Below are positions 32,496 to 45,000 of a stretch of 64,000 nucleotides of DNA, piece by piece. The position numbers and the translations under genes were made by a program. Position 1 is the stretch's first letter, and every line of letters starts with the position of its first letter. Below the pieces are notes generated by a model. The model was not told the DNA's origin and ran no database searches. It saw only the letters and a list, made by a program, of their open reading frames with translations. Location: positions 124,001 through 188,000 of the IMG/VR virus record IMGVR_UViG_3300028536_000014. One strand, 5' to 3'.

Positions 32496-33251
32496 TTACC
32501 ATCTAGTATAAAGAGGAATGATAGGAAGCTCAGAAACTGAAACTTTCCTGAGAGCATCGAGTGCAAGTTCACGTGTACTTTCCATCGCAACCAGTTCACG
32601 AGAGTCCACGATACGACGGAGTTGTTTTTCTGTTACTTTTGTTTCAGAAACCGATTCAAGTGAAGGCGAATCCCATTTATTTGCCATGGTAATACCTTGC
32701 TCATTAACTTGATCAAACGTTACGATCGTTGTTAGAACACGATAACACTGACCACGTTCATAATAATTATTGGTTAAACCACGAATTGAGAATCCAACAT
32801 TTTCAGATGGATTCAATAAAGATGCGGCAAGTGATGCACCGTGAGGACCAGACGGCTTGATTCGTGCCATAATAGCAACGAGTTTAGGATTCTTGAACTG
32901 TGGATTACGACCACCAAATTCATAATCCAGACGAAGTTCCCGAATATGACAACAAACATTGGTTTCCTCAATCGTTAGAATACGTTCCAAATAAGAATCT
33001 TCTGATTGACCAGGTTGCTTTTTGGGATGACCCAATTCCGATTTAAGAACACCTTTATTAATGCGCCGCATCAGAATTGAAGAACTCTTAAAAAGATCTT
33101 CAGCGCCCTGCAGGGTGTAATACTCACCTGCGCTATTGAACGCATTCAAACCACCTACAGGGAACTCGTAATAACCATCTGAATCAGGTGTCAGAATTCC
33201 TTTCTTCCCTTGGGGGAGAAGACGAGTCGATGTAAAGCGAATCGATTTCAT
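32496..33251 (-). CDS. prohead protease (phiKZ gp175-like)
   Basis: ELGHP (His), GFSIRG (Ser), TFDQVNEQG (Asp); C-terminal SLE/AME candidate autocleavage sites. Confidence 0.9.
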   Translation of the reverse strand: MKSIRFTSTRLLPQGKKGILTPDSDGYYEFPVGGLNAFNSAGEYYTLQGAEDLFKSSSILMRRINKGVLKSELGHPKKQPGQSEDSYLERILTIEETNVCCHIRELRLDYEFGGRNPQFKNPKLVAIMARIKPSGPHGASLAASLLNPSENVGFSIRGLTNNYYERGQCYRVLTTIVTFDQVNEQGITMANKWDSPSLESVSETKVTEKQLRRIVDSRELVAMESTRELALDALRKVSVSELPIIPLYTRW

Positions 33252-33253
33252 AA

Positions 33254-33973
33254 TTAGGCTCGTAAGATCTTTTCGATCTTTCCTGTTTTAGTTGAAGGAT
33301 TTACAATCGCTGAAACGATACCGTCGTGAAAATAAGCACCGGACAATTTACTGACCGTATTATTCACGGCGTATAAGACAGACTTCAACGAAATGAATTC
33401 GATCTTATCCAAACCATAGTCATTAATATCTTTAGCAGTTTGTCTCAAAGACTTTGAACGCTCTTCAATCCGACGGGCGATAACGCCTACTAAGAACTCA
33501 ATAGTCTGTGGAACTTTAGCGATTTTAGATCCAGCATGTTTATCGGCTGTATCAAAAATTGAACATAAGTCATCGACATTTGCCCACCAAGGAACCTTTC
33601 CTTTCATAATAAATTCGTCTAATACGTTAAACGTCAACGTATCTTGACGTATCAATTTTAATGAACGAATAATAGGCGTATCGATATCAAAATGGAATTC
33701 ATAATACGATTCTTCTTCAATAGTCGCCATCGTTGTACGAGAAGGAGTTAAATCCATCAGTGAACAAACGTTCATTACAGTATAAACATCATCTTCGAAG
33801 AGTATTGGAAAGAATCCATAAACAGACGTGACATCTGTAATACTCCCCAGTCCAACATTCATCCATCGCTCAGGAACCTGTATACGGCAAGGTACTCGTG
33901 TGAGTACCTTGCCGTCTTCTAATACAGTTAAACGATCGAGACAAATATTTTTGTCACGTTTGAATAAGGTCAT
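33254..33973 (-). CDS. conserved protein (phiKZ gp176-like)
   Basis: Synteny; GKVPWW and SKLSGAYF motifs. Confidence 0.7.
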   Translation of the reverse strand: MTLFKRDKNICLDRLTVLEDGKVLTRVPCRIQVPERWMNVGLGSITDVTSVYGFFPILFEDDVYTVMNVCSLMDLTPSRTTMATIEEESYYEFHFDIDTPIIRSLKLIRQDTLTFNVLDEFIMKGKVPWWANVDDLCSIFDTADKHAGSKIAKVPQTIEFLVGVIARRIEERSKSLRQTAKDINDYGLDKIEFISLKSVLYAVNNTVSKLSGAYFHDGIVSAIVNPSTKTGKIEKILRA

Positions 33974-35448
33974 TAAATCCTGACGATTTGAATCTGACCT
34001 TGGAGATAATCGACGATATAATTGATCGTCGCAATGAACGCTGCTTCTTCGGGTGAGGTATTTTCACTCAATGTTCCGATCTCCTGCATGTCGTTCACAA
34101 ACTTTTCGGCATAAGTAAAGTGATATTTATAACCAGCGATCAGTTTCTTTGCCATTGTCTGTACATCACAAAGTGTTTCTTTCCTCAGACCGTGGAGATA
34201 TTTCTCCACTTCTTTCTTGATATTATCATGACAAGAAGGATTCCTCAATAGGAACGATTGTTCCAGATCTTCTTGATAATCAGCTGTCATATATCGGCAG
34301 AACAGATCATAATAGAACTTACGCAGACTTGCTGCTTTAGTGTATTCAAGACTTTCAAGATAAACCTGAACGTACTTCTTCCAGGTGTCTTGAAGCACGA
34401 TAGCGTTCTTATCGATCTCACTAACCGAATAGAAACGCTTGGAACCCACCAGGATACCCATGATGATATCAGCATTACCACCAGCGGTTAACCAACGATC
34501 ATACACTTCTGACGAAACTGTGATTTTCTTGTGGAACGTATCCACATAAGTAACCAGGATATCAGATTTGTTATTGTTACTGATACGACCCAGAGTATTA
34601 ATTAACACTGTTCCTGCATAAAACATATGTTCGAACAAACGATTCTTCACTGAAGCAGTTGATTCGTTCGTGATCATATCGGGCAGATGATTCGTGTAAT
34701 AGTTAGCAATCAGAAAATAAGCTAACGACACATTAAGTCGAACATACATATCAGGAGAATTCATATCGTCTTGACTGACGAAAGAACCTTTATAGTTCCT
34801 ATTCACGTTAGAGCTAGCAAAGAAACTATACCAGACAGAATCCAGATATTTGAACTGGTTGGTAACATACCAACTCGCTACTAAATTATCCAAAGCCGTA
34901 TTGCTGGTCGAAGCGACTGTCAAGAAATCATCCGGAATACCCATGTCGAAATTTAACGTTGAGGTATTCGGATTAACTGTTTTCTTGTATTTGAATGTTT
35001 CCAGAAGACTTAAGAAACCAGCTTCCTGAACAATATCGGGGATGCTAGTACGACAGATCTCGAGTTCAGAAGCTGCATTGGATCCACCCAGCATTTCCAT
35101 GAAAGCTTGGGAATCTTTAGCAAATTCTATTGTACGAGGGACTACCGTGTTATGAATATAACTGATGTGAGCTTTGATACACCCCGTCAATTTCTCCACA
35201 CTGGAGTCGAATGATGCCCCCCATATCACACCAAAATCACCAGCGCTATGGAATTCCAACATATCGCTGTAGAAGTTGAGGTTGTCATCATAATCGATAG
35301 GAGCTGGCACCGGTCGATCATTTTCAATCGGTGTCGAAAGTCCGACGAGTTCAGAAAGCACACTCGACATAGAAGGCTGAAGTAGGATACCCTTCTTCGC
35401 CAGATCTTCTGCAAATGCAGCAGCAGTATTAAACGAACGTCCAAGCAT
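33973..35448 (-). CDS. conserved protein (phiKZ gp177-like)
   Basis: 491 aa; synteny between the protease and RNAP genes. Confidence 0.65.
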   Translation of the reverse strand: MLGRSFNTAAAFAEDLAKKGILLQPSMSSVLSELVGLSTPIENDRPVPAPIDYDDNLNFYSDMLEFHSAGDFGVIWGASFDSSVEKLTGCIKAHISYIHNTVVPRTIEFAKDSQAFMEMLGGSNAASELEICRTSIPDIVQEAGFLSLLETFKYKKTVNPNTSTLNFDMGIPDDFLTVASTSNTALDNLVASWYVTNQFKYLDSVWYSFFASSNVNRNYKGSFVSQDDMNSPDMYVRLNVSLAYFLIANYYTNHLPDMITNESTASVKNRLFEHMFYAGTVLINTLGRISNNNKSDILVTYVDTFHKKITVSSEVYDRWLTAGGNADIIMGILVGSKRFYSVSEIDKNAIVLQDTWKKYVQVYLESLEYTKAASLRKFYYDLFCRYMTADYQEDLEQSFLLRNPSCHDNIKKEVEKYLHGLRKETLCDVQTMAKKLIAGYKYHFTYAEKFVNDMQEIGTLSENTSPEEAAFIATINYIVDYLQGQIQIVRI

Positions 35449-35459
35449 GTCAAATGTCC

Positions 35460-35657
35460 TTAAATAGAATCGATGATGTTGCTGGTGAGTTTGGACACAA
35501 CAAGATGTTCAATCTTATCGCGAGTCAAAGATTCGTCATTCAGAGTCTTCGAAATATGTTGTTCGCTGATACCTGCAATGATGGCATGAGCGAGAGCGGT
35601 AGCATTTGACAACACGGTACCGTTTTGTTTGATAGCAGCGGCATTTGGGTTTTGCAT
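35460..35657 (-). CDS. small hypothetical protein
   Basis: ATG 35657 with GAGG SD; fills the gap after the RNAP gene. Confidence 0.65.
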   Translation of the reverse strand: MQNPNAAAIKQNGTVLSNATALAHAIIAGISEQHISKTLNDESLTRDKIEHLVVSKLTSNIIDSI

Positions 35658-35670
35658 TTGAACCTCGTGT

Positions 35671-36789
35671 TTATTCGTTATACAACTTGACCGCATTCTG
35701 AGCAAACAATTTCAGAAGCGTAATGGTAGTACCCAGGATATAAGGAGACATCACATTACGAGCTGCGATGGACCGACATCCAAAAACCGCATCGATTTCT
35801 TCACCTGCTTCTGTATAAAGTTTGTAATCCATGACTTCTGAGTTAACACTTTTCATTTGATTCGCGAAAACCACCTTATCAGCAATTCCCATATTCATGT
35901 TAACAGTGATATAGAAACGAATCTCGGCTTTATTCAAACCAAGCGGCGTTCCTTCAACACGATAATCGTCAGTCACTTCCCCAGTAAACTTGGGTTTATG
36001 GGTGCTTTTAGCTTGTTCAGAAATGAATTGATCGCTAAGATCAGCTAATTTACGGAGAGAAGAACTCATCTGTTCCTTATCACCGTGATAGAAGACCTCT
36101 ATACGATCCACAATTCCGAAATAATTGGAACGAGGAGATTGCTTAGAAAGACCTTTCAGTGTCTCAATAGCGTTCTCACCAAACGTTCCGATTTGAGATG
36201 TTATTTCATCTTCGACACTCATTAAAATGTCTTGTGGTTTAACAGTTTGAGAAGGTTTTACAACATGATGAATATTCTGTTCGAATGTCACCACAAAACT
36301 TCTCAAGTAAGTAACCCTAGTCTCAAGCTTCTCTGATAACTTTTTCGAAATAGAAGAAGCATCTTCATGAGTTTGTTTGGTTTCCCATAATACAGTTTTA
36401 GCTGTCAATGAGTTTTTCATCACAAGTTGACCAGGATTCCAAACATCATATTCGAAATAAGAAATGTTATAAGCAATGGGATCTCCCTTCTTAAAGGACT
36501 CCCCTTCCTTAACAGATGCTTCGATATCAAACGGAAAGATCGATCCTTCAGATCGACCAAACTGACGTCCTAATTCAACACCGATCATTTTACCACTTTT
36601 GTATTGAACAACAACACCTTTATCAGTTACCTTAGTAACAACACCATCCTCTTTTGCACAGTAAGCAAAAAGAGGATTTGTCCGTTGTGCAATAATCGAT
36701 TCAAATCCAGTTCTTACAAAAGGTGGGTGATATCCTTTTGCTGGAATGCCGTGACTATTCTGAATTGAGATGAAATTGATACGATTCAT
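35671..36789 (-). CDS. virion RNA polymerase beta subunit (gp178-like), exon 2
   Basis: NRINFISIQ, VRTGFE, HEDAS, ADKVVFANQMKS, IDAVF...SIAAR. Confidence 0.9.
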   Translation of the reverse strand: MNRINFISIQNSHGIPAKGYHPPFVRTGFESIIAQRTNPLFAYCAKEDGVVTKVTDKGVVVQYKSGKMIGVELGRQFGRSEGSIFPFDIEASVKEGESFKKGDPIAYNISYFEYDVWNPGQLVMKNSLTAKTVLWETKQTHEDASSISKKLSEKLETRVTYLRSFVVTFEQNIHHVVKPSQTVKPQDILMSVEDEITSQIGTFGENAIETLKGLSKQSPRSNYFGIVDRIEVFYHGDKEQMSSSLRKLADLSDQFISEQAKSTHKPKFTGEVTDDYRVEGTPLGLNKAEIRFYITVNMNMGIADKVVFANQMKSVNSEVMDYKLYTEAGEEIDAVFGCRSIAARNVMSPYILGTTITLLKLFAQNAVKLYNE

Positions 36790-37243
36790 CGAGAATATTC
36801 AAACAAACTCGCTAGGTCTGTTTCGCGCCATTACGCGCAGCTTTAGGTCTCCCTAAAGTCTAGGTCATATCTTCACCCACAGCTTAACCTGGTTGGGTGC
36901 TTCCCATTTCGGATCGCTTGATCCTACAGGCTGACAAAGCCCTGACCGTCGAACCTTCTCCATATCCGAAGACGTAGGAGCTTGGCTGCTGATTGTCTCT
37001 ACTCCGGGCTTTTCCAACCCTGGCTTTGTCTTTCGACTCGCAGTGGTGACCGGATTTGACGAGATGTTCCAGCAATTAAAGAAGATTCAACTGTAGATTT
37101 CTCTACAGTCGGACTATAGTACGAATAGATGTATCCATCGGGATAAACACCTTTGTTATTGTTGGTTCTAAACCCCATGTTAAGTGTGGTTTTCTTGATA
37201 TTGAATCAAGAAAAAATCAACAATAACAATTTACGTACGTTCA
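36790..37243 (-). mobile_element. group I intron (IA-like), 454 nt, no homing endonuclease
   Basis: Exon ends in U (GAT), intron ends in G. P AATTGCTGGAA 37067-77, Q AATCAGCAG 36986-94, R GTTCGACGGTCA 36943-54, S AAGATATGACC 36863-73; GNRA loops in P2 and P9; splicing restores HDD|MNR. Confidence 0.92.
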
Positions 37244-40200
37244 ATCGTCGTGCATTGCACCCGCTGCTAAAAGAACAGCCGAACAGTGTCGATTAGCATT
37301 TTGGACTTCCGCATCATGATTCTTAAGACCACGATGATTACGAAGATGAGGATCTGAAGAGGTATAGATATTAACACCCACATCAGAACTATCTACAGTT
37401 CCTTCAGAGATTACACCGACATCTTGAACATGAAAAGATCGAGAAGCTTTATTCATTCCATCAGAAGAACGACCGCCTTCTCCAACATAGGTTACACTTT
37501 CATCATTCTTAATGTCTTGAATCGGATTGATTTCAGGAACTAACATTACAGTTGGATCACTGTTGATAGCTGACCAGACCTTATAAGGACTGATATCAAT
37601 CTTACTTCGACCTGCTATGTTCTTACTCCGGAACTGACGAATAGCTGCCGTCATTTCTTTATAGACAGCACCAGAGAAACGTTCATATCCTCGAATACGT
37701 GTATAGGAACCATCGTATTCTTTTGGATGTTGATATGACATTAACATTTCAGTAGCTTTCAAAAGTAATCCATCGAAAGTCACTGGTTCATTCATGTCTT
37801 TTAATATTTCTTCAGTGATAGGATCGATGAAATAATCAAACAACATATCAATCTCACGAAGATAGATTGCACCTAGACCTTTACTGGTTAAGAGATTCAT
37901 GTAGATATCTTGATGTTCAAAATCCTTAACACTTGCCGATTTCGTCATCTTGGCATAATCTAAGAATCCAGCCAGTATCATTGTTGCAAAGTGATTTTTA
38001 CGAGAGAAGATATAAACACCGTCATTAAACGGAATGGGATATTCATCTGGCGTAAGATTCAATCGTTTCTTTGGTTCAACAAAACGTGGTTTGACTTCCA
38101 ATAAAGCTAGAAGTTTAGACCACCCCAATCGGTAACCTAAAATCACACCTACTGGCACATTTTTGCGAAAGATTGCTAATTCACTAAAACGAATAGGTGA
38201 GTTATGAGGATCCAAATTAAGAACTTTAAAGATATCCCCAAAAAGTTCTAATTTTCCTTCTTTTAAAATATAAAAGTCATTATTCATATCAACCCAAAGA
38301 AGTCCGTTATCCGGAGCATGTCCACACCACCGCATACCTTCTCTAGGAGATGACATCCTAATATTCTTACCGTTATCGCACATCAAAGAAAAGCCTCCTG
38401 CTTTAAAGGAGACGAAGCTTGTTGAAAGTAAACCGAAGATATAAGGTATCTTGGCATAAGAATCAAAGGTATTACCAGGTACTACATCTTTGATCCATTC
38501 ACTACCTTCAAAAGAAGCCTTATTGATTTGCTTTAAGATCCAATCAGAAGTGCTATTTGCAATTTTACTTTCCGAAGAAACAAATGCTTTTCCATAGTAG
38601 CTATTCAGAGAGACTTCGTTCGGACTGATCTTACGAATCGGTAAGTCTGCACGATTCTTTCTAAGCATATAACGGTTACCCGCTACCTTAAACGAACCGT
38701 CATGTTCAACGACTGGAAGTTTAAACCAAATTGAAGAAGCAGTACCATTGATAGGTTTCAATTGTAGATTATGAATTTCTACATTTCCCATCACGGTATG
38801 TTCTTGAGTGATCTCATGTTTTTGAATAATGACACCACCCTTCTGAAGACCACCCACCATTTTAATAACATCATTCTTCATGTGTTCATCGATGTAATCA
38901 CGAGTATAACTCTGAAGTGTACTTTGAGTCATGCTCTTATCAATGATAGTTGGATGATCGGCTAACTGTGTCTCACTTGAATGAATGATCAGTTGTTCTG
39001 GATGGATTTCAGTCTTTTGAGCTGTTAAATTACCACTACCATAAGGGTCTAACATCTTAATATAAGCATCGGCATCTTGAAGCGCTTTCTTATAAGAAGC
39101 AGCATTCAATGTTCCATCTTCTAATGCTTCGACCATTTTCTTCTTTAAGGCATTATTAGGTATTAATGCTGTATGAACTTCTTCATGAATATCTTCGTGG
39201 TTATAAACTGTCGTAGGATGAACTTCTACAACTTCGTTATCTTTTAATGAAATACCACGCTTATGAAGATCAAAACGATTCTTTTGTTCCAGAATCTCCA
39301 TATCGTCATTCAGATTCTGGATGATATTATCGCTAAGTTCATCGATTGCATCGATAGATTTCAAAGGTTCTTGAAACTTCTTTTCTATAGGGGGGGTTAT
39401 ATTCTTTTGTTGAAAACTTTCGATCGGACCTTCGTCGATGTAATCGTGTTCATCATTATGATCTTCAATCTCTTCAACAGTTTCTTCTGTCTGAGGAATA
39501 GTTTCAGCTGCATCTTCAGGAATCGCAGAAGAAATAACCAATAGGTATTTAAGTAAAGCTCTAACCATGATCTTACGATCACGTTGTAAAGATACTTTAA
39601 TCGTAGAGACGTTTTCATCACCTTTGATCCAACTATAAAAGTACGAAAGGTTCAAAGTGCTACAACGTCCATCTGCTAACATGAAAACCATGTTAATCTT
39701 CTTCAGTGCTTCAATAGGAATCAAATTGAAAACACTACGATCTCTCAACTCGTCTTTGATAAAATTAGACAAATGAAGAATCAAACGTTTCTCATGAGTA
39801 TTAAATAAACGAGCTAACGTCATACCTTCTTTATCAGAATAATTCAACAACATGTTATAACTGGGGATATTAATGATTGGATCCAAAAGAACAAAATGTT
39901 GACGATTAGATTTTAATGCCAATGCACCAATATGTGACCAGAATGTTTTCTGATAACTCTCCCATTTCTGATATTCGGAAATGGGAGTATGAACATATCG
40001 ATATGTGAATTTCAATGGATTGTAATCCACCACAATCATCGTACGTTCATCAATTTGTATGTCAGATGCTCGAGGAATATAACGAAACAGATTATGTTTC
40101 TTGATGAATGGTAGAATAAAACGTTGTGGAACAAACGGAAGTGTTCTTGGATGCCCTTCCATTAAGTCACTGTGATAAACCAGTTCTAAAGGAAGACGTT

Positions 40201-40378
40201 TGCTATATCCTTGAAAATAAGGTTTTGATGCATCTGGAAACATTTCATCATCTTGAGTGAAATGATGCAACATTGAATTACGAGGAAATCCTTTAAAGAT
40301 TTGAAGACGTGGAGATATCAGTTCGTTAAAACGACGTACTCCTGTCTCACGGTAAAATTGCGTATAAAGTTGTAACAT
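37244..40378 (-). CDS. virion RNA polymerase beta subunit (gp178-like), exon 1
   Basis: DLPIRKI, LNSYYGK, RIRGYER, GEGGRS, GVISEGTVDSSDVG; ends MHDD; spliced product 1417 aa. Confidence 0.9.
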
Positions 40379-40401
40379 GCTATTCCTTAGGTAAATACGA
40401 T

Positions 40402-42042
40402 TTAAGAAAAGTTACCTAATACAAGATCGATGACGTCATTGCTAGAACTGAACGCAATTGATCCATCAACCGCAACGTAATAATCACGACTATTCAGGAG
40501 TTTCTTAAACTCCGCTTTTGAATCATCAATCATGTAACATGTTAATGAAGTTGTATCGCCATCATAATCACCACCAAGACGACCTAGGTGCTGACTAGCT
40601 GGACTTAACGCATCAAAGAAGTAATCTTCCATCTTTGGATATTCTGGTGCGATCACACCTGTTCTCTTCCATTCGTCATCGAGTTCGTATTTAACGAGTC
40701 CTGTAACTGTACTTTTTAAATAGTTGTAACTAGGATAAATACTTCCAAATCCAGTTACAGGATATCGAGTGATTGTACCGGGTGTTTCAGGTGCTATTTG
40801 AAAGACAGATAAATAGAAGAGTTCGGCATAAGTGATTGGATGAACATGTTCTTTCTTAAGGTTAACAGGAAGTTCATCGATGTTTGTAAGAAACCGATAA
40901 GTGTTATCTGGTCCATTATAAATCAAACCTAGATAATAACCACTAATCATAATTGATTCATGACGTAGATCTTTGACTTTAAAACGATGGAACTGTTTTT
41001 CCAGTCCATCATTCGTCATCCAGTCATCATAGAAACTTGGATCGATATTGACATTCACTGACTTAAGAGTTTTAGTAGAAATTAAGTTTGCTGGTGCATT
41101 TGGCCCTACAAAGATCTTTGATAGATATCCATCACGAACGAGCTGAACTGCTTTCGGAAAGATTGATCGAAGAAATTGATACAGACCTACAACATGTTGA
41201 GTCGCTGATACAAACTGCGGATCATCTCGATGTTTGACATTCTGAATATAAGGAGTGATGACATTTCGAGTTGAATTATCGATATGTCGAGCAACCCACT
41301 TTCCTTGGATCAGTTTACCTTTACCTTCCAGGATGTTAGTAATGTAATCGTAAATCTGATTCACAGCGATTTGAAGATTATATCGCATGTTATTCAAATA
41401 TTCTTCATTACTAGTAATAGAGACATTCTCGATCACATTGGAGAGTCCAATTACTTTTCGATAAAGATTATTAATCTCATCTTCAGTAGGCTTTCCATTG
41501 TCATCAATTGTGTAATCTCGAAGACCTGCAGGAAGTACTAGCAATTTATCAAATAAAGGATTCTTGCGGTACTTCTCTACCAGTTTAATATTAAACGATC
41601 GTTTTGCAGAATCACGTTCAGTAAATTTCAAAACTGGAAAGTGATCTAAGAAGAATTTATAACCTGTTTCTCCATTGATCGGATCAGACTTTATAAAATC
41701 TTTAATTTGATGATCAAAGGTTGCGTATTCACGGCCAGAAATGATCTGGCCGTATAGTTCTTTAAGATCAGTAATTGCTTTGAAATAGACTGGATGAAAG
41801 ATTGGAATTTGAAGATTAACATATCCAAAGTTTCTTGAACGACGAGCATCTCCTACTTTACCAAAAGTTTCAGTAGAGTAAAGACCGTCTGGATGAAAGT
41901 TTTTGGTCATACCGGACGTAATGTCCATAACCGATATTCGTCTTAAATTCTTAACGCTTTCATTACCTGATAACAAAAGAAGCTCGATGTTAAAGGGTGG
42001 AAAGTTCTCTAGCATGTTTGTGATCCTTTGATGGTTGTTCAC
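40402..42042 (-). CDS. virion RNA polymerase beta' subunit (gp180-like)
   Basis: DGLYSTETFG, VLPAGLRD, TRNVIT, TRYP and catalytic DYDGD; true start may be ATG 42015. Confidence 0.92.
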   Translation of the reverse strand: MNNHQRITNMLENFPPFNIELLLLSGNESVKNLRRISVMDITSGMTKNFHPDGLYSTETFGKVGDARRSRNFGYVNLQIPIFHPVYFKAITDLKELYGQIISGREYATFDHQIKDFIKSDPINGETGYKFFLDHFPVLKFTERDSAKRSFNIKLVEKYRKNPLFDKLLVLPAGLRDYTIDDNGKPTEDEINNLYRKVIGLSNVIENVSITSNEEYLNNMRYNLQIAVNQIYDYITNILEGKGKLIQGKWVARHIDNSTRNVITPYIQNVKHRDDPQFVSATQHVVGLYQFLRSIFPKAVQLVRDGYLSKIFVGPNAPANLISTKTLKSVNVNIDPSFYDDWMTNDGLEKQFHRFKVKDLRHESIMISGYYLGLIYNGPDNTYRFLTNIDELPVNLKKEHVHPITYAELFYLSVFQIAPETPGTITRYPVTGFGSIYPSYNYLKSTVTGLVKYELDDEWKRTGVIAPEYPKMEDYFFDALSPASQHLGRLGGDYDGDTTSLTCYMIDDSKAEFKKLLNSRDYYVAVDGSIAFSSSNDVIDLVLGNFS

Positions 42043-42064
42043 CCTTTACTAGGGATAAATTTTA

Positions 42065-45000
42065 ATGGCTAAACAAAAGAAGAGTCGTATTGATAATGGA
42101 GATTTCAGGTTTGATAGTGAACTTGACTTCAATTTTGATGGTGGTTTCGATACTTTCGATACTAAGAAAGCAAGTAAGAAACGCAAACCTGTTCATGATG
42201 TTATACGTGGTACTGCTGATGCTACAAAGAGCAAACTAAAGTCAGGATCTTTCTGGAACGACTTTGCCAAGAAGGCATTACCAAAGTCTTATAGCATTAT
42301 CACTGATGAACTTAAGAAGTCAAGTGAAATTCTTTCGGAAACATATCGAGAATCAGCTCGTCTCTTAAAACCCGACTTAGCTCGTATTGGTCGGCAAGTT
42401 GATTCATTGGTTCCTGAAGAATCTCGTCGAATCAAGAAATGGACCAATAAACTCAAATCGCATCAGGAACAGAATATTTCTGCATCTGCAGAAGCATTTC
42501 AAAATCAGGCTATTACTCAAGCTCAGACAGAAATCTTTGGTCGTATGCAAGATCATACCGATGCTAAGGAAGCTAGAGATCGTGCAGAACAGCGTGTCAA
42601 AGATAAGTTAGATGCCAAACGATTCTCTGCTAATGCAAATATTCTCGGTAATATTAACGAAGGTATTCAGAGATTGGCTTCGTATACAATGTCAGTGAAC
42701 TCTTCTTATCAGAAGAAATCATTAGAACTTCAGTATCGTTCTTATTTCGTTCAAGCTGAACTTTTAAAAACTACAACGAAATATAACGAACTCTTTAAAG
42801 CCTATTTTGAGGCCATCAAGGATAATACTGCACTTCCTGACTTTGTGAAGATTACAAAATCTGAACGTTTTAGAGAAATTGCTAGAACTAATATTTATTC
42901 AGGTATTCAGCAAGGTATCTCTGGAGGTTTTAAACGAGCAACAAAACGACTGGGTGGTTATGTTAGAGGAGCTGCTGGTCGTTTAGGTGATATAACAATG
43001 GGTCTGGACTCTGTTGATATGTTAAGAGACCAGATGAAAACTGCAAAAGAAATGGGCATAGACGAGTCTATGCTTTATCATAGTTCAAATGGAATAGGTG
43101 GTGCTCTAATAGATTTCATTGCAAGCAAAGCAGGTAAGAAATTAGGGCGCTTTTTTCCACAAGGTGGGTTTGTCTCTCGTAATCTAGCACGAGGTGCAAG
43201 GTTTGTTAAAAACCCAACCCAAGGAATTGATAAACTTCAAAAATCAAAAGGCTATCAGAAATTCATAAATCAGAAAGGACCTATGGGTGACTTTGCTCGT
43301 TTTATGAATATGTTTGTTAATGATTTTAAAACTCCTAAAGAAAATGCTAACTTAACCAAGGGTGGAGATTCTGCTGGACATATGACACCACACTTCTTCA
43401 GTCAAAAAGCTCATAAGTCTTTGACTGAAGTGATTCCTGGTTATTTGGCTCGTATTCTTCAAGAAACATCAGCGATCCGAATGGGCAGTCGTAATTTAGG
43501 ACAATTGCCTACTTATGATTGGAGACGGGGTAGGTTTACAACATCAAGTAAACTTCAATCAAAAATTCGTACTGGACTTCTTGGAGTATCTTCAACAGGA
43601 GCAATGGATTATAAACTGGACCAGGTTTCAAAAGCTTTTACTGGTAATGAATTAACAGGTGATCAATCTGTTCGTGTTAAACAGTTTATACACACGATCT
43701 CAGGCAATCCTGAAATGGATTATAACTCCAATAAAGTATTTCGGAGTAAAGCATTTCTAACACTTCCTCGTGAAGATCGTCGAATGATTATTACACAGAT
43801 GAAAAAGCATCGTGGTAGTCAAGAAGCCAAAAGTGTTATTACCAACGTAATGCGTGATGTTGGTGAAACACATAGTAATCAGATAGCTGCTGCTAAGAAT
43901 ATGATGCAACAGTTAATTCAAGAAGGTCATCAAGAAGAATTAATTCGTGCTAAATTAATTAGACCCAATAAACAAGGTGGGTATGATATTAATCTTCAGA
44001 AATATAATCAACTTATTCAGTCTCGTGGAATTACAGCTAAAGGTATTGCTCCTAAGAAAGCAAGTGGTTGGATTATTCCAACGAATGAGAAAGGCGAGCA
44101 TGAGAATATCGGAGATATAGAAGGTAAAATCTACGATACAAGTAAGAAACGTTATATGCATGATCCGAATTATACACCTGATCCGGACAAGAAACCGTTC
44201 ATGACGTTTTCTGATCGTAATGCTAAAACTAATATCGGTAAAAACCGTCGTCGTGGAGTGTTAAGTCGACTGGCTCGATTGGCAACTTATAAATATCGTT
44301 ACCGTGGTGGTAACGATAAGAATCAACACCAAGGATTTATGGCTCAGGAAGTCAATAAAACTTTTGGTGATAATGCTGCTCCTGGCGGGACTGCAGTTGA
44401 CATGAGTTATATGACATCGATGAATACTGAAGGTATACAGGAACTTCATCGTGATCAACAGAAACAGATGAAAGATCCAACATCGATCGATCTGTTACGA
44501 GACATTAGTAAACGTCTTGGTGAATTAGGAGCTATCAGTAAGGTTGGTATGGGTATTGAACCTACTGGTGATTCAAAGAGTTTATTTGGCGATACCGCTA
44601 ATCTTGCAAGTCGTTATATTCGTATTTTAGCAAGTAGAGGTGCAGCTGGAACTGGACGTGCTGGTCGTTTACTATTTGGAACTGCTGGTGCTATCGGTCG
44701 TCTTGTTCGTCGTCATGGTGGAGGATTACTCTCTAATGTCGGTGATCTTGCAGGAGAATATGGTCCGTCAGTAGCACATCAAGGCATATCTGGATTAGGT
44801 CGTGGTGGTCGATTCTTACTTGGAGCGACAGGCGGTCTTTTCGGTGCAGCTGGTGGTGTTGGACGTTTAACCAGAAGAGCACTTGGCCGTTATGCTAGAC
44901 CAGCAATATCAAGTACTGCTGGGTTTATAGGTAATCATCTCTTTGACGGTTTAGGTCGAATGGGGGATTTCTTAACGGGTAGTGCTAAATTAGGAGGGCG

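What the first reader, a model, noticed from the sequence alone, without database searches (positions are those of the whole stretch)
36790..37243. ORF-less group I intron with a compensated non-canonical P7 splits the virion RNAP beta gene
Seen: the two 'ORFs' are out of frame and are joined only by removing 454 nt, which gives HDD-MNR (RpoB has HDDANR). Core helices are readable: P2 with GAAA loop, P3 CUUCUU/GGGAAG, P7 GGUCA/UGACC in place of the usual GACUA/UAGUC with the G-binding pair kept, two extra hairpins between P7 and P3 (IA-like), P8 CACCCA/UGGGUG, and P9 with GAGA loop. Introns in jumbo-phage RNAP genes are known and often carry homing nucleases; this one has none.
Basis: partly seen in the sequence, partly recalled or inferred. 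Interest (0 to 1): 0.6.

Follow-up and report, generated by a model that had tools for sequence, protein, structure and literature searches.

The report
Self-splicing intron in phage polymerase gene
A 454-base self-splicing (group I) intron that has lost its own nuclease gene interrupts the virion RNA polymerase beta gene of an uncultured soil jumbo phage, at exactly the spot where Pseudomonas phage PhiPA3 carries a nuclease-bearing intron, so it is a new example of a known thing.

Summary
On the minus strand, window 36790-37243 is a 454-nt group I intron (Rfam RF00028, 60.4 bits against a cut-off of 50). It splits the orthologue of phiKZ gp178, the virion RNA polymerase beta subunit, between ...HDD and MNR.... 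One phage family profile runs from position 1050 in exon 1 to 1051 in exon 2, and intron-less homologues are colinear to the codon.

Two points lower the novelty. First, this is the insertion site published for the PhiPA3 gp210 homing-endonuclease intron. Intron versions without an ORF also sit there in phage HPP-Temi and in one IMG/VR contig. Second, the GGUCA/UGACC P7 recurs at 54 places in IMG/VR, nearly all with the subgroup-IA layout.

One point is new. The enlarged P1 loop keeps about 28 codons that match only the C-terminus of gp210, with third-codon-position divergence. The intron therefore looks like a gp210-type mobile intron whose nuclease gene was deleted.

No RNA data exist for this phage, so splicing is inferred. 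Verdict: a new member of a known kind, of modest interest.

The parts
37244..40378 (-). Exon 1 of the virion RNA polymerase beta gene (1045 codons, ends ...AMHDD).
   Evidence: ORF list and translation. It matches PHROG 3148 positions 3-1050 of 1424, E 2.5e-249, and aligns to phiKZ gp178.
36790..37243 (-). Group I intron, 454 nt, subgroup IA-like, with no intact ORF.
   Evidence: RF00028 at 60.4 bits. All helices verified. Folding z-score -4.78. Removing it makes the family profile continuous.
35671..36789 (-). Exon 2 of the same gene (372 codons plus stop, starts MNRINF).
   Evidence: Translation. It matches PHROG 3148 positions 1051-1422. In phiKZ gp178, FLC1-1B, FLC9 and PA7 it follows exon 1 directly.
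37242..37246 (-). P1 5' strand: exon bases GAU plus intron bases UG. The 5' splice site lies between 37244 and 37243.
   Evidence: Pairs 5/5 with UAGUC at 37112-37116, including the U(-1).G wobble. The same GAU|N-N / N-N-GUC design is seen in the PhiPA3, HPP-Temi and L090 same-site introns.
37112..37125 (-). Internal guide sequence, the 3' strand of P1 and of the P1 extension.
   Evidence: Helix check. The MFE fold recovers the 5-bp extension 37234-37238 / 37119-37123.
37116..37199 (-). Remnant of the 3' end of a gp210-type HNH homing-endonuclease gene, lying inside the enlarged P1 loop.
   Evidence: tblastn with PhiPA3 gp210 residues 291-317. Local alignment score 72 against shuffles 25.5 +/- 4.2, maximum 53. 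Identity by codon position is 17/20/10 of 27, and 9 of 15 identical residues use different codons. No other jumbo-phage intron endonuclease scores above background.
37153..37229 (-). P1a: a perfect 12-bp stem (37218-37229 / 37153-37164) that closes the P1-loop insertion. An inner 7-bp hairpin lies at 37193-37211.
   Evidence: Helix check 12/12 and 7/7. Present in the MFE and centroid folds.
37088..37111 (-). P2, 10 bp with a GAAA tetraloop.
36953..37084 (-). P3 5' strand (37079-37084) and the P4-P6 domain. The domain includes a P5 extension with a GUC-GAAA-GAC hairpin and a P6 arm with a UUCG loop.
   Evidence: cmscan alignment and helix check. The P5 extension is shared almost letter for letter with the HPP-Temi intron and the phiKZ gp56-region intron.
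36943..36949 (-). P7 5' strand A-(C bulge)-GGUCA. The G at 36947 and the C at 36863 form the guanosine-binding pair.
   Evidence: Pairs 6/6 with 36862-36867. Aligned to the consensus aAGACUA.
36911..36942 (-). P7.1 and P7.2, the two hairpins between P7 and P3' that mark subgroup IA.
   Evidence: Each pairs 5/5. cmscan shows them as an insertion. All nine related jumbo-phage introns have the same layout.
36862..36905 (-). P3 3' strand (36900-36905), P8 (36874-36899), J8/7 and the P7 3' strand UGACCU (36862-36867).
36790..36858 (-). P9 with a GAGA loop (36841-36858), P9.1 (36824-36837), P9.2 (36801-36823) and the terminal G at 36790. The 3' splice site lies between 36790 and 36789.
   Evidence: Only this G gives the two codons that all homologues have between DD and R.
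40402..42042 (-). Upstream neighbour: the N-terminal part of virion RNAP beta' (phiKZ gp180 orthologue), given for context.
   Evidence: PHROG 2986 E 8e-185 and a Pfam Rpb1 domain 1 match below its cut-off. It aligns to gp180. Its GGDYDGD motif is uninterrupted.

Best explanation
Window 36790-37243 (minus strand) is a subgroup-IA group I intron in the virion RNA polymerase beta gene of an uncultured 245-kb soil jumbo phage.

Inferred mechanism. The pre-mRNA folds into the P1-P9.2 structure. The guide sequence UAGUC holds the exon 1 end GAU plus the first two intron bases, with a U.G wobble at the cleavage site. An external guanosine docks at the G-C pair of P7 and attacks after that U. The terminal G at 36790 then takes the same pocket, and the free exon 1 end attacks after it. 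This joins GACGAU to AUGAAU and gives one roughly 1417-residue beta subunit reading ...HDD-MNR..., in the conserved HDDANR-type segment of bacterial RpoB. Unspliced RNA stops at the UGA formed by the first three intron bases.

Origin. The intron occupies the same homing site as the PhiPA3 gp210 intron. Its P1 loop, which is where gp210 sits in PhiPA3, keeps the last ~28 codons of a gp210-like endonuclease gene. It is therefore most likely a former mobile intron that lost its nuclease by deletion, and it now persists because imprecise loss would destroy an essential gene.

Shown here: sequence, structure, site identity and the remnant. Inferred: the catalysis itself and the order of evolutionary events.
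For: - Family match: RF00028 at 60.4 bits, above the cut-off, full model.
- Structure: all core and peripheral helices fully paired, with U.G at the 5' splice site and a terminal G. Folding z-score is -4.78.
- Exon continuity: PHROG 3148 runs 3-1050 in exon 1 and 1051-1422 in exon 2.
- Colinear intron-less homologues: in phiKZ gp178, PA7, FLC1-1B, FLC9 and LucasX the two exon matches are separated by exactly the two unaligned codons.
- Synteny gp180-gp178-gp177 is kept.
[quoted passage not shown] HPP-Temi has NDD|PKRINF with a 348-nt intron. IMG/VR locus L090 has NED|AKRANF.
- Relatedness: the ribozyme core is 62-67% identical to the PhiPA3, HPP-Temi and phiKZ introns.
- Endonuclease remnant.
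- No independent start for exon 2: there is no Shine-Dalgarno-like motif before its ATG, whereas most real starts in the window have an AGGA-type motif.
Against: - There is no RNA evidence. The only public run holding this DNA is a soil DNA metagenome, so splicing has not been observed.
- Exon 2 begins with ATG where homologues have Pro or Ala, which leaves room for separate translation.
- P10 is weak, about 3 bp (read from the sequence).
- The RF00028 score is the lowest but two of the eleven above-cut-off jumbo-phage introns compared, partly because of the variant P7.
- The remnant is short (27-28 codons). A second reading frame of the same bases also gives an unexpectedly good match, to a different part of gp210. 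That is a warning about chance similarity in such short stretches.
Confidence: 0.9

Rival explanations
1. The gene is truly split. Exon 1 and exon 2 are translated as two polypeptides that assemble, as other jumbo-phage RNAP subunits do, and the intervening RNA no longer splices.
For: Exon 2 starts with ATG, and exon 1 is closed by a TGA right at the junction. Split beta and beta' subunits are usual in these phages (established knowledge). PHROG 38251 is a shorter beta family that ends about 70 residues before this point.
Against: A complete, uninterrupted ribozyme with every helix paired and correct splice-site bases sits exactly between the ORFs. There is no ribosome-binding motif before the ATG. 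All orthologues examined are single polypeptides across this point. The break falls inside the conserved HDD-xNR segment. The same site carries introns in three other phages.
Confidence: 0.04
2. The intron never carried an endonuclease. It is a primary ORF-less intron, and the similarity of its P1 loop to the gp210 C-terminus is chance or reflects shared RNA structure.
For: The match is only 27-28 codons. The last part of gp210 overlaps the guide sequence and P2, which are conserved as RNA. Another frame of the same bases also matches gp210 surprisingly well. The other two ORF-less same-site introns show no remnant. ORF-less introns that share a target with a free-standing nuclease are a known starting state (PMC3984707).
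Against: The tested stretch lies upstream of the guide sequence. Its score is about 11 SD above shuffles, with none of 5000 shuffles reaching it. Third codon positions are the least conserved, and 9 of 15 identical residues use different codons. The match is colinear with the position of gp210 in the same P1 loop of the same-site intron. Six other intron endonucleases give only background scores.
Confidence: 0.2
3. The element is a decayed, splicing-dead intron and the beta gene is a pseudogene.
For: The P7 sequence departs from the consensus, the Rfam score is only moderate, and P10 is weak.
Against: All three P7 changes are compensated and the G-binding G-C pair with its bulged neighbour is kept. 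The same P7 occurs in dozens of other phage introns. Both exons are long, open and match the family profile end to end. The record is a complete genome with terminal repeats, and vRNAP beta is needed for early transcription in this phage group (PMC11620839).
Confidence: 0.03

Closest known systems
PhiPA3 gp210 intron in the vRNAP beta gene (gp211/gp209); Birkholz et al., Science 2024, PMC11620839
   Same: It has the same host gene and the same insertion point, directly after the second Asp of the conserved DD. It uses the same P1 design, exon GAU paired to a guide ending GUC. It has the same IA layout with P7.1 and P7.2, and the core is 62% identical. The nuclease gene lies in the P1 loop, where this intron keeps a matching C-terminal remnant.
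   Different: PhiPA3 carries an intact 330-aa HNH nicking endonuclease in an intron of roughly 1.3 kb, whereas this one is 454 nt with no working ORF. PhiPA3 has the consensus P7 GACUA/UAGUC, and here it is GGUCA/UGACC. The host phages are distant: about 40% amino-acid identity in beta between this phage and Pseudomonas jumbo phages such as phiKZ, PA7 and HPP-Temi. PhiPA3's own beta was not aligned here.
ORF-less intron of Pseudomonas phage HPP-Temi (PP968062, 119664-120011), annotated only as two 'RNA polymerase beta subunit' CDSs
   Same: Same site (NDD|PKRINF) and also without an endonuclease. It starts with UGA and ends in G. The core is 66% identical, and it shares the P5 extension and the P9 sequence.
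   Different: It is 348 nt with a short P1 loop and no nuclease remnant, and it has the consensus P7. Its core is 76% identical to the PhiPA3 intron, which is closer than either is to the intron studied here.
phiKZ introns near gp56, gp72 and gp179 (predicted by Mesyanzhinov 2002, as cited in PMC10914365)
   Same: They belong to the same ribozyme lineage (55-67% identity), with an IA layout and an HNH gene in the 5' part. They also lie in RNAP genes at catalytic motifs; for example, gp180 ends ...LGAD at the intron.
   Different: They sit at other insertion sites. phiKZ gp178 is intron-less at the DD site. All carry intact nuclease ORFs. ONT-cappable-seq did not detect splicing for them under the conditions used (PMC10914365).
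Classical phage subgroup IA2 introns (T4 td, nrdB, sunY; SPO1; Twort)
   Same: They show self-splicing architecture with P7.1/P7.2 and P9.1/P9.2 and insert into conserved codons of essential nucleic-acid enzymes. Related introns come with and without nuclease ORFs (established knowledge; review PMC3984707).
   Different: They have different host genes and hosts. No direct sequence comparison was made here, so the IA2 label rests on architecture only.

Membership tests
Group I intron (Rfam RF00028) | Covariance-model score at or above the curated gathering score | tested here: met
   60.4 bits against 50, E 7.5e-13, model positions 1-253.
Group I intron (Rfam RF00028) | P1 formed by the exon end and an internal guide, with a U.G wobble at the 5' splice site | tested here: met
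   GAU+UG pairs with UAGUC, and U at 37244 faces G at 37114. Same-site introns show the same design, with a compensating change in L090 (AG / CU).
Group I intron (Rfam RF00028) | Terminal G at the 3' end of the intron | tested here: met
   G at 36790. It is the only position that restores the frame and the two-codon spacing seen in homologues.
Group I intron (Rfam RF00028) | Conserved core P3-P8 with the P3/P7 pseudoknot, and a guanosine-binding G-C pair in P7 next to a bulged base | tested here: met
   P3 6/6, P4 6/6, P5 4/4, P6 2/2, P7 6/6 and P8 6/6 pairs. G 36947 pairs with C 36863, preceded by bulged C 36948.
Group I intron (Rfam RF00028) | Removal restores a continuous host reading frame | tested here: met
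   PHROG 3148 profile runs 1050 to 1051 across the exons, with codon-exact colinearity with five intron-less homologues.
Group I intron (Rfam RF00028) | Guanosine-dependent self-splicing | not testable with these tools
   No RNA run holds this phage, and the laid run consists of DNA contigs.
Subgroup IA (IA2-like) | Extra helices P7.1 and P7.2 between P7 and P3' | tested here: met
   Two 5-bp hairpins at 36911-36942, shown as an insertion at that point by cmscan. Subgroup definitions are taken from PMC3984707. No subgroup-specific model was available.
Mobile (homing) group I intron | An intact homing-endonuclease gene inside the intron | tested here: not met
   The three ORFs of 50-63 aa have no Pfam or PHROG match. 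Only a remnant of ~28 codons of a gp210-like C-terminus survives, preceded by a stop.
gp210-type intron of the vRNAP beta DD site | Insertion directly after the second Asp of the conserved DD of vRNAP beta | tested here: met
   HDD| here, MNDD| in PhiPA3 and NDD| in HPP-Temi, plus the published description.
gp210-type intron of the vRNAP beta DD site | Common descent of the ribozyme with the PhiPA3 intron | tested here: inconclusive
   The core is 62% identical to PhiPA3 and 66% to HPP-Temi, but 65-67% to phiKZ introns at other sites. The same-site introns do not form a distinct group on this rough MAFFT measure. The gp210-specific remnant argues for shared descent.

The most novel reading that the evidence does not exclude
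The nuclease-less intron may be kept because it pays. By occupying and splitting the DD target, it would make this phage's essential vRNAP gene immune to gp210-type nicking endonucleases of co-infecting jumbo phages. It might still be moved in trans by the gp210 homologue encoded elsewhere in the same genome (G000:C1:77837-78742), which would be collaborative homing. On this reading the intron would be a defence or competition device rather than a decaying parasite.
Probability: 0.15. Interest if true: 0.5.

Novelty: new member of a known kind. Interest (0 to 1): 0.25.

Why it matters
It adds a fourth occupant to the one jumbo-phage homing site whose biology has been worked out, the DD site of vRNAP beta targeted by PhiPA3 gp210. 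It comes from a soil phage only about 40% identical in beta to the Pseudomonas jumbo phages. Together, the PhiPA3 intron (nuclease intact), this one (nuclease remnant), and the HPP-Temi and L090 introns (no trace) look like successive stages of the invasion, decay and loss cycle of homing elements at a single site. For annotation, it shows that the two 'RNA polymerase beta' ORFs should be joined, here and in HPP-Temi. It also shows that RF00028 under-scores introns with the GGUCA/UGACC P7 or with large insertions. None of this changes what is known about how group I introns work.

Tried and rejected
- Megablast of the whole gene region against 50,697 phage records found no match. The search for related loci with exon 2 in IMG/VR found none either. 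No close relative of this phage was therefore available to compare intron-plus and intron-minus alleles.
- A 16-base J8/7-P7 pattern gave 8 IMG/VR loci, none of which is an intron by RF00028. They were taken as chance matches.
- RF00028 reached its cut-off at only 2 of 20 places with the variant P7 and E<=0.01 at 1 of 13. The statement that those places are group I introns therefore rests on inspection: P4/P6 consensus strings, P7.1/P7.2 hairpins and a P9 hairpin. L079 looks like a chance match in coding DNA. Several others have a nuclease ORF just upstream of J6/7.
- No RNA sequencing run was found. Laying the one DNA run showed only that the assembly is reproducible and that no intron-less contig exists there.
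- The 110-nt P1-loop insert is not repeated elsewhere in the genome, so it is not a dispersed repeat.
- The idea that the same-site introns form their own clade was not supported by rough identities.
- A second-frame match of the P1 loop to gp210 residues 56-79 was set aside as probable chance. It overlaps the colinear C-terminal match, and the two gp210 regions are not alike.
- The spliced (joined) protein was not built, searched or folded.

Full report
**What is there.** The feature lies on the minus strand. An ORF of 1045 codons (37244..40378) ends ...AMHDD and runs straight into TGA. 454 nt further on, an ORF of 372 codons (35671..36789) begins ATG AAT CGT. The two ORFs are out of frame, since 454 is 1 mod 3. 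A scan of the whole window against Rfam gave one match above a gathering score: RF00028, group I intron, at 36841..37130(-), 60.4 bits against 50, over the full model. A permissive rescan of 33000-43000 found nothing else of note.

**The host gene.** Pfam does not recognise either exon, but PHROG 3148 ('RNA polymerase beta subunit', 1424 positions) matches exon 1 over positions 3-1050 and exon 2 over 1051-1422. The profile is therefore continuous to the residue once the 454 nt are removed.
- tblastn of each exon separately found about 310 jumbo-phage records.
- In FLC1-1B, FLC9, LucasX, PA7 and other phiKZ-like phages the two matches abut, leaving exactly the two codons that were not aligned.
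- Direct reading gives KDD-PKRVNF, KDD-AKRVNF and HDD-PKRINF, against HDD|MNRINF here.
- Both exons align to phiKZ gp178, and the upstream 546-codon ORF aligns to gp180. The order gp180-gp178-gp177 is kept.
- gp178 is the beta subunit of the virion-packaged polymerase (PMC11620839).

**Anatomy of the intron.** Intron base 1 is window 37243 and base 454 is window 36790. A script confirmed every proposed helix as fully paired.
- P1 is exon GAU plus intron UG, paired to UAGUC, with the exon's last U opposite G. A 5-bp extension follows.
- A 12-bp stem (P1a) closes a roughly 110-nt insertion in the P1 loop.
- P2 is 10 bp with a GAAA loop, P3 is CUUCUU/GGGAAG, and P4, P5 and P6 pair fully.
- The P5 extension has a GUC-GAAA-GAC hairpin, and the P6 arm ends in a UUCG loop.
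- P7 is A-(bulged C)-GGUCA paired to UGACCU.
- P7.1 and P7.2 lie between P7 and P3', and P8 is CACCCA/UGGGUG.
- P9 has a GAGA loop, followed by P9.1, P9.2 and a terminal G.
- The free-energy fold recovers most of these helices unaided, with z = -4.78.
- P10 is weak, about three pairs, as read from the sequence.
- The two hairpins after P7 are the hallmark of subgroup IA (PMC3984707).

**Is the P7 unusual?** It is unusual relative to the Rfam consensus and to nine related introns: three in phiKZ, four in PhiPA3 and two in HPP-Temi. All nine read GACUA/UAGUC. Here three consecutive pairs are changed on both sides, and the G-C pair that binds guanosine, with its bulged neighbour, is kept.

It is not rare, however. 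The paired pattern (GTTCRACGGTCA, 55-85 nt, GATATGACC) occurs at 54 places in 53 IMG/VR loci. These fall into 27 sequence clusters, and all but one (L079) show the IA layout: a hairpin, GUAG, a second hairpin, P3', P8 and a P9 hairpin. In most there are also P4/P6 consensus strings upstream.

RF00028 itself recognises few of these variant introns, so their assignment rests on inspection. The second intron of this same genome also has a compensated variant, GAACA/UGUUC.

**The site is already known.** Birkholz et al. [quoted passage not shown] They also showed that gp210 nicks the intron-less phiKZ gp178 at that point.

I confirmed this in PhiPA3: exon 1 ends ...MNDD, the gp210 ORF follows in the 5' part of the intron, and the ribozyme core lies behind it. 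The gp210 stop codon sits inside P2, and the guide sequence just before it reads CAGUC, so the nuclease gene occupies the P1 loop.

Two further occupants of the same site have no nuclease:
- Pseudomonas phage HPP-Temi has NDD|PKRINF with a 348-nt intron, annotated only as two beta CDSs. Its intron is unique in the phage collection and 76% identical to the PhiPA3 core.
- IMG/VR locus L090 has NED|AKRANF with a 444-nt intron.

All four introns use the same P1 design, with the Asp codon GAU paired to a guide ending GUC. In L090 the first two intron bases and their partners have changed together.

**A remnant of the nuclease.** tblastn of gp210 against this phage's whole genome gave two hits. One is a 302-codon HNH ORF far outside the window (24% identity, E 2e-11). 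The other lies inside the present intron.

In the intron, window 37199..37116 read in one frame aligns with gp210 residues 291-317 of 330; for example, VYPDGYIYSYY aligns with VYSDGYRYGYY.
- The tested stretch (window 37113-37205) was restricted to bases upstream of the guide sequence, to avoid RNA-level conservation. The local score is 72, against 25.5 +/- 4.2 for 5000 shuffles, with a maximum of 53.
- 15 of 27 residues are identical, and 9 of those 15 use different codons.
- Identity by codon position is 17, 20 and 10 of 27, which is the signature of divergence under protein-level selection.
- Six other jumbo-phage intron nucleases score only 24-34, and the HPP-Temi and L090 introns have no such match.
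- The remnant is colinear with gp210: it lies in the same loop and runs into the guide sequence and P2.
- A stop codon precedes it, and none of the small intron ORFs matches any family.

I conclude, with roughly 0.75 confidence, that this intron once carried a gp210-type gene of which about 870 nt were deleted. Part of the surviving coding sequence now forms one strand of the 12-bp P1a stem.

There is one caveat. Another frame of the same bases matches gp210 residues 56-79 better than shuffles do (score 53 against 23.6 +/- 3.6). Both matches cannot reflect descent, and gp210's two regions are not alike. I treat the second match as chance, but it shows the limits of such short comparisons.

**Separate translation of exon 2?** The ATG is peculiar, since homologues have Pro or Ala there. 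However, the 25 nt before it contain no AGGA-type motif, while most plausible starts in the window do. Orthologues are single chains. The break lies in the conserved HDD-xNR segment. An intact ribozyme fills the gap. I give this rival about 0.04.

**Expression data.** None exists. The only run holding the DNA is a soil metagenome, probably the source sample. Its Logan contig reproduces 35900-38100 exactly and shows no intron-less form.

**Context in the genome.** The window is bases 124001-188000 of a 244,725-bp IMG/VR record with terminal repeats. That record holds a second ORF-less group I intron (59.5 bits), which splits a beta'-like gene between SMNAD and FDGD. It also holds a weak RF00028 match next to the gp210 homologue and two tRNA genes.

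**Verdict.** The finding is real and was read correctly. It is a new member of a known kind: a nuclease-deleted, subgroup-IA group I intron at the published DD homing site of jumbo-phage vRNAP beta. Its P7 variant is compensated but common.

Noticed in passing
L002:1453-1792 (G000:C1:112493-112832, minus strand; outside the window): A second ORF-less group I intron of about 340 nt (RF00028, 59.5 bits) lies in the same genome. It splits a beta'-like RNAP gene (PHROG 2987; Pfam Rpb1 domain 2 truncated at 140/166) exactly inside the catalytic motif, SMNAD|FDGD. P1 again uses GAU|UA against UAGUC. Its P7 is another compensated variant, GAACA/UGUUC.
   Followed up: partly
L003:1501-2944 (G000:C1:77299-78742, minus strand; outside the window): A 302-codon HNH endonuclease ORF (PHROG 59, HNH_3 just under its cut-off) is 24% identical to PhiPA3 gp210. 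It is followed by tRNA-Leu(UAA) and then by a weak RF00028 match (24.5 bits). tRNA-Thr lies further on. I did not settle whether this is a third intron, a free-standing nuclease, or a candidate for trans-homing.
   Followed up: partly
window 37112-37183, minus strand: A second reading frame of the P1-loop bases is 10/24 identical to gp210 residues 56-79 (score 53 against shuffles 23.6 +/- 3.6). It overlaps the frame that matches the gp210 C-terminus, so both cannot be descent. This is unexplained and taken as chance.
   Followed up: yes
window 40402-42042, minus strand: The vRNAP beta' N-terminal gene (gp180 orthologue) carries its metal-binding motif as GGDYDGD, uninterrupted. phiKZ has the gp179 nuclease intron at this motif (gp180 ends ...LGAD). 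The two phages therefore have introns at opposite catalytic sites of the same enzyme.
   Followed up: partly
L004:3428-3775 (PP968062.1 119664-120011): Pseudomonas phage HPP-Temi has an unannotated ORF-less group I intron at the same DD site. The record lists two 'RNA polymerase beta subunit' CDSs and a 39-codon 'hypothetical protein' that is really read-through into the intron. Megablast found no other phage record holding 80% or more of this intron.
   Followed up: yes
L090:890-1419 (IMGVR_UViG_3300030004_000014, minus strand): Another uncultured jumbo phage has an ORF-less intron of about 444 nt at the same site (NED|AKRANF). It has the consensus P7 and a compensating change in P1: intron AG paired to guide CU.
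   Followed up: partly
window 37016-37041, minus strand (P5 extension): A 26-nt stretch of the P5 extension, with a GUC-GAAA-GAC hairpin, is nearly identical in this intron, the HPP-Temi intron and the phiKZ gp56-region intron, although the cores are only about 66% alike. It may be a tetraloop module under strong constraint.
   Followed up: no
window 36981-37000 and 37060-37077: A separate 151-nt contig from the soil run matches only the two P4 strands. It probably comes from a different group I intron of another organism in the sample.
   Followed up: no
L029, L043 (IMG/VR loci with the variant P7): In several variant-P7 introns the 220 nt upstream of J6/7 is coding sequence with an HNH-like motif. 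There the nuclease sits in the P6 region rather than in P1, and RF00028 does not detect these introns at all.
   Followed up: no
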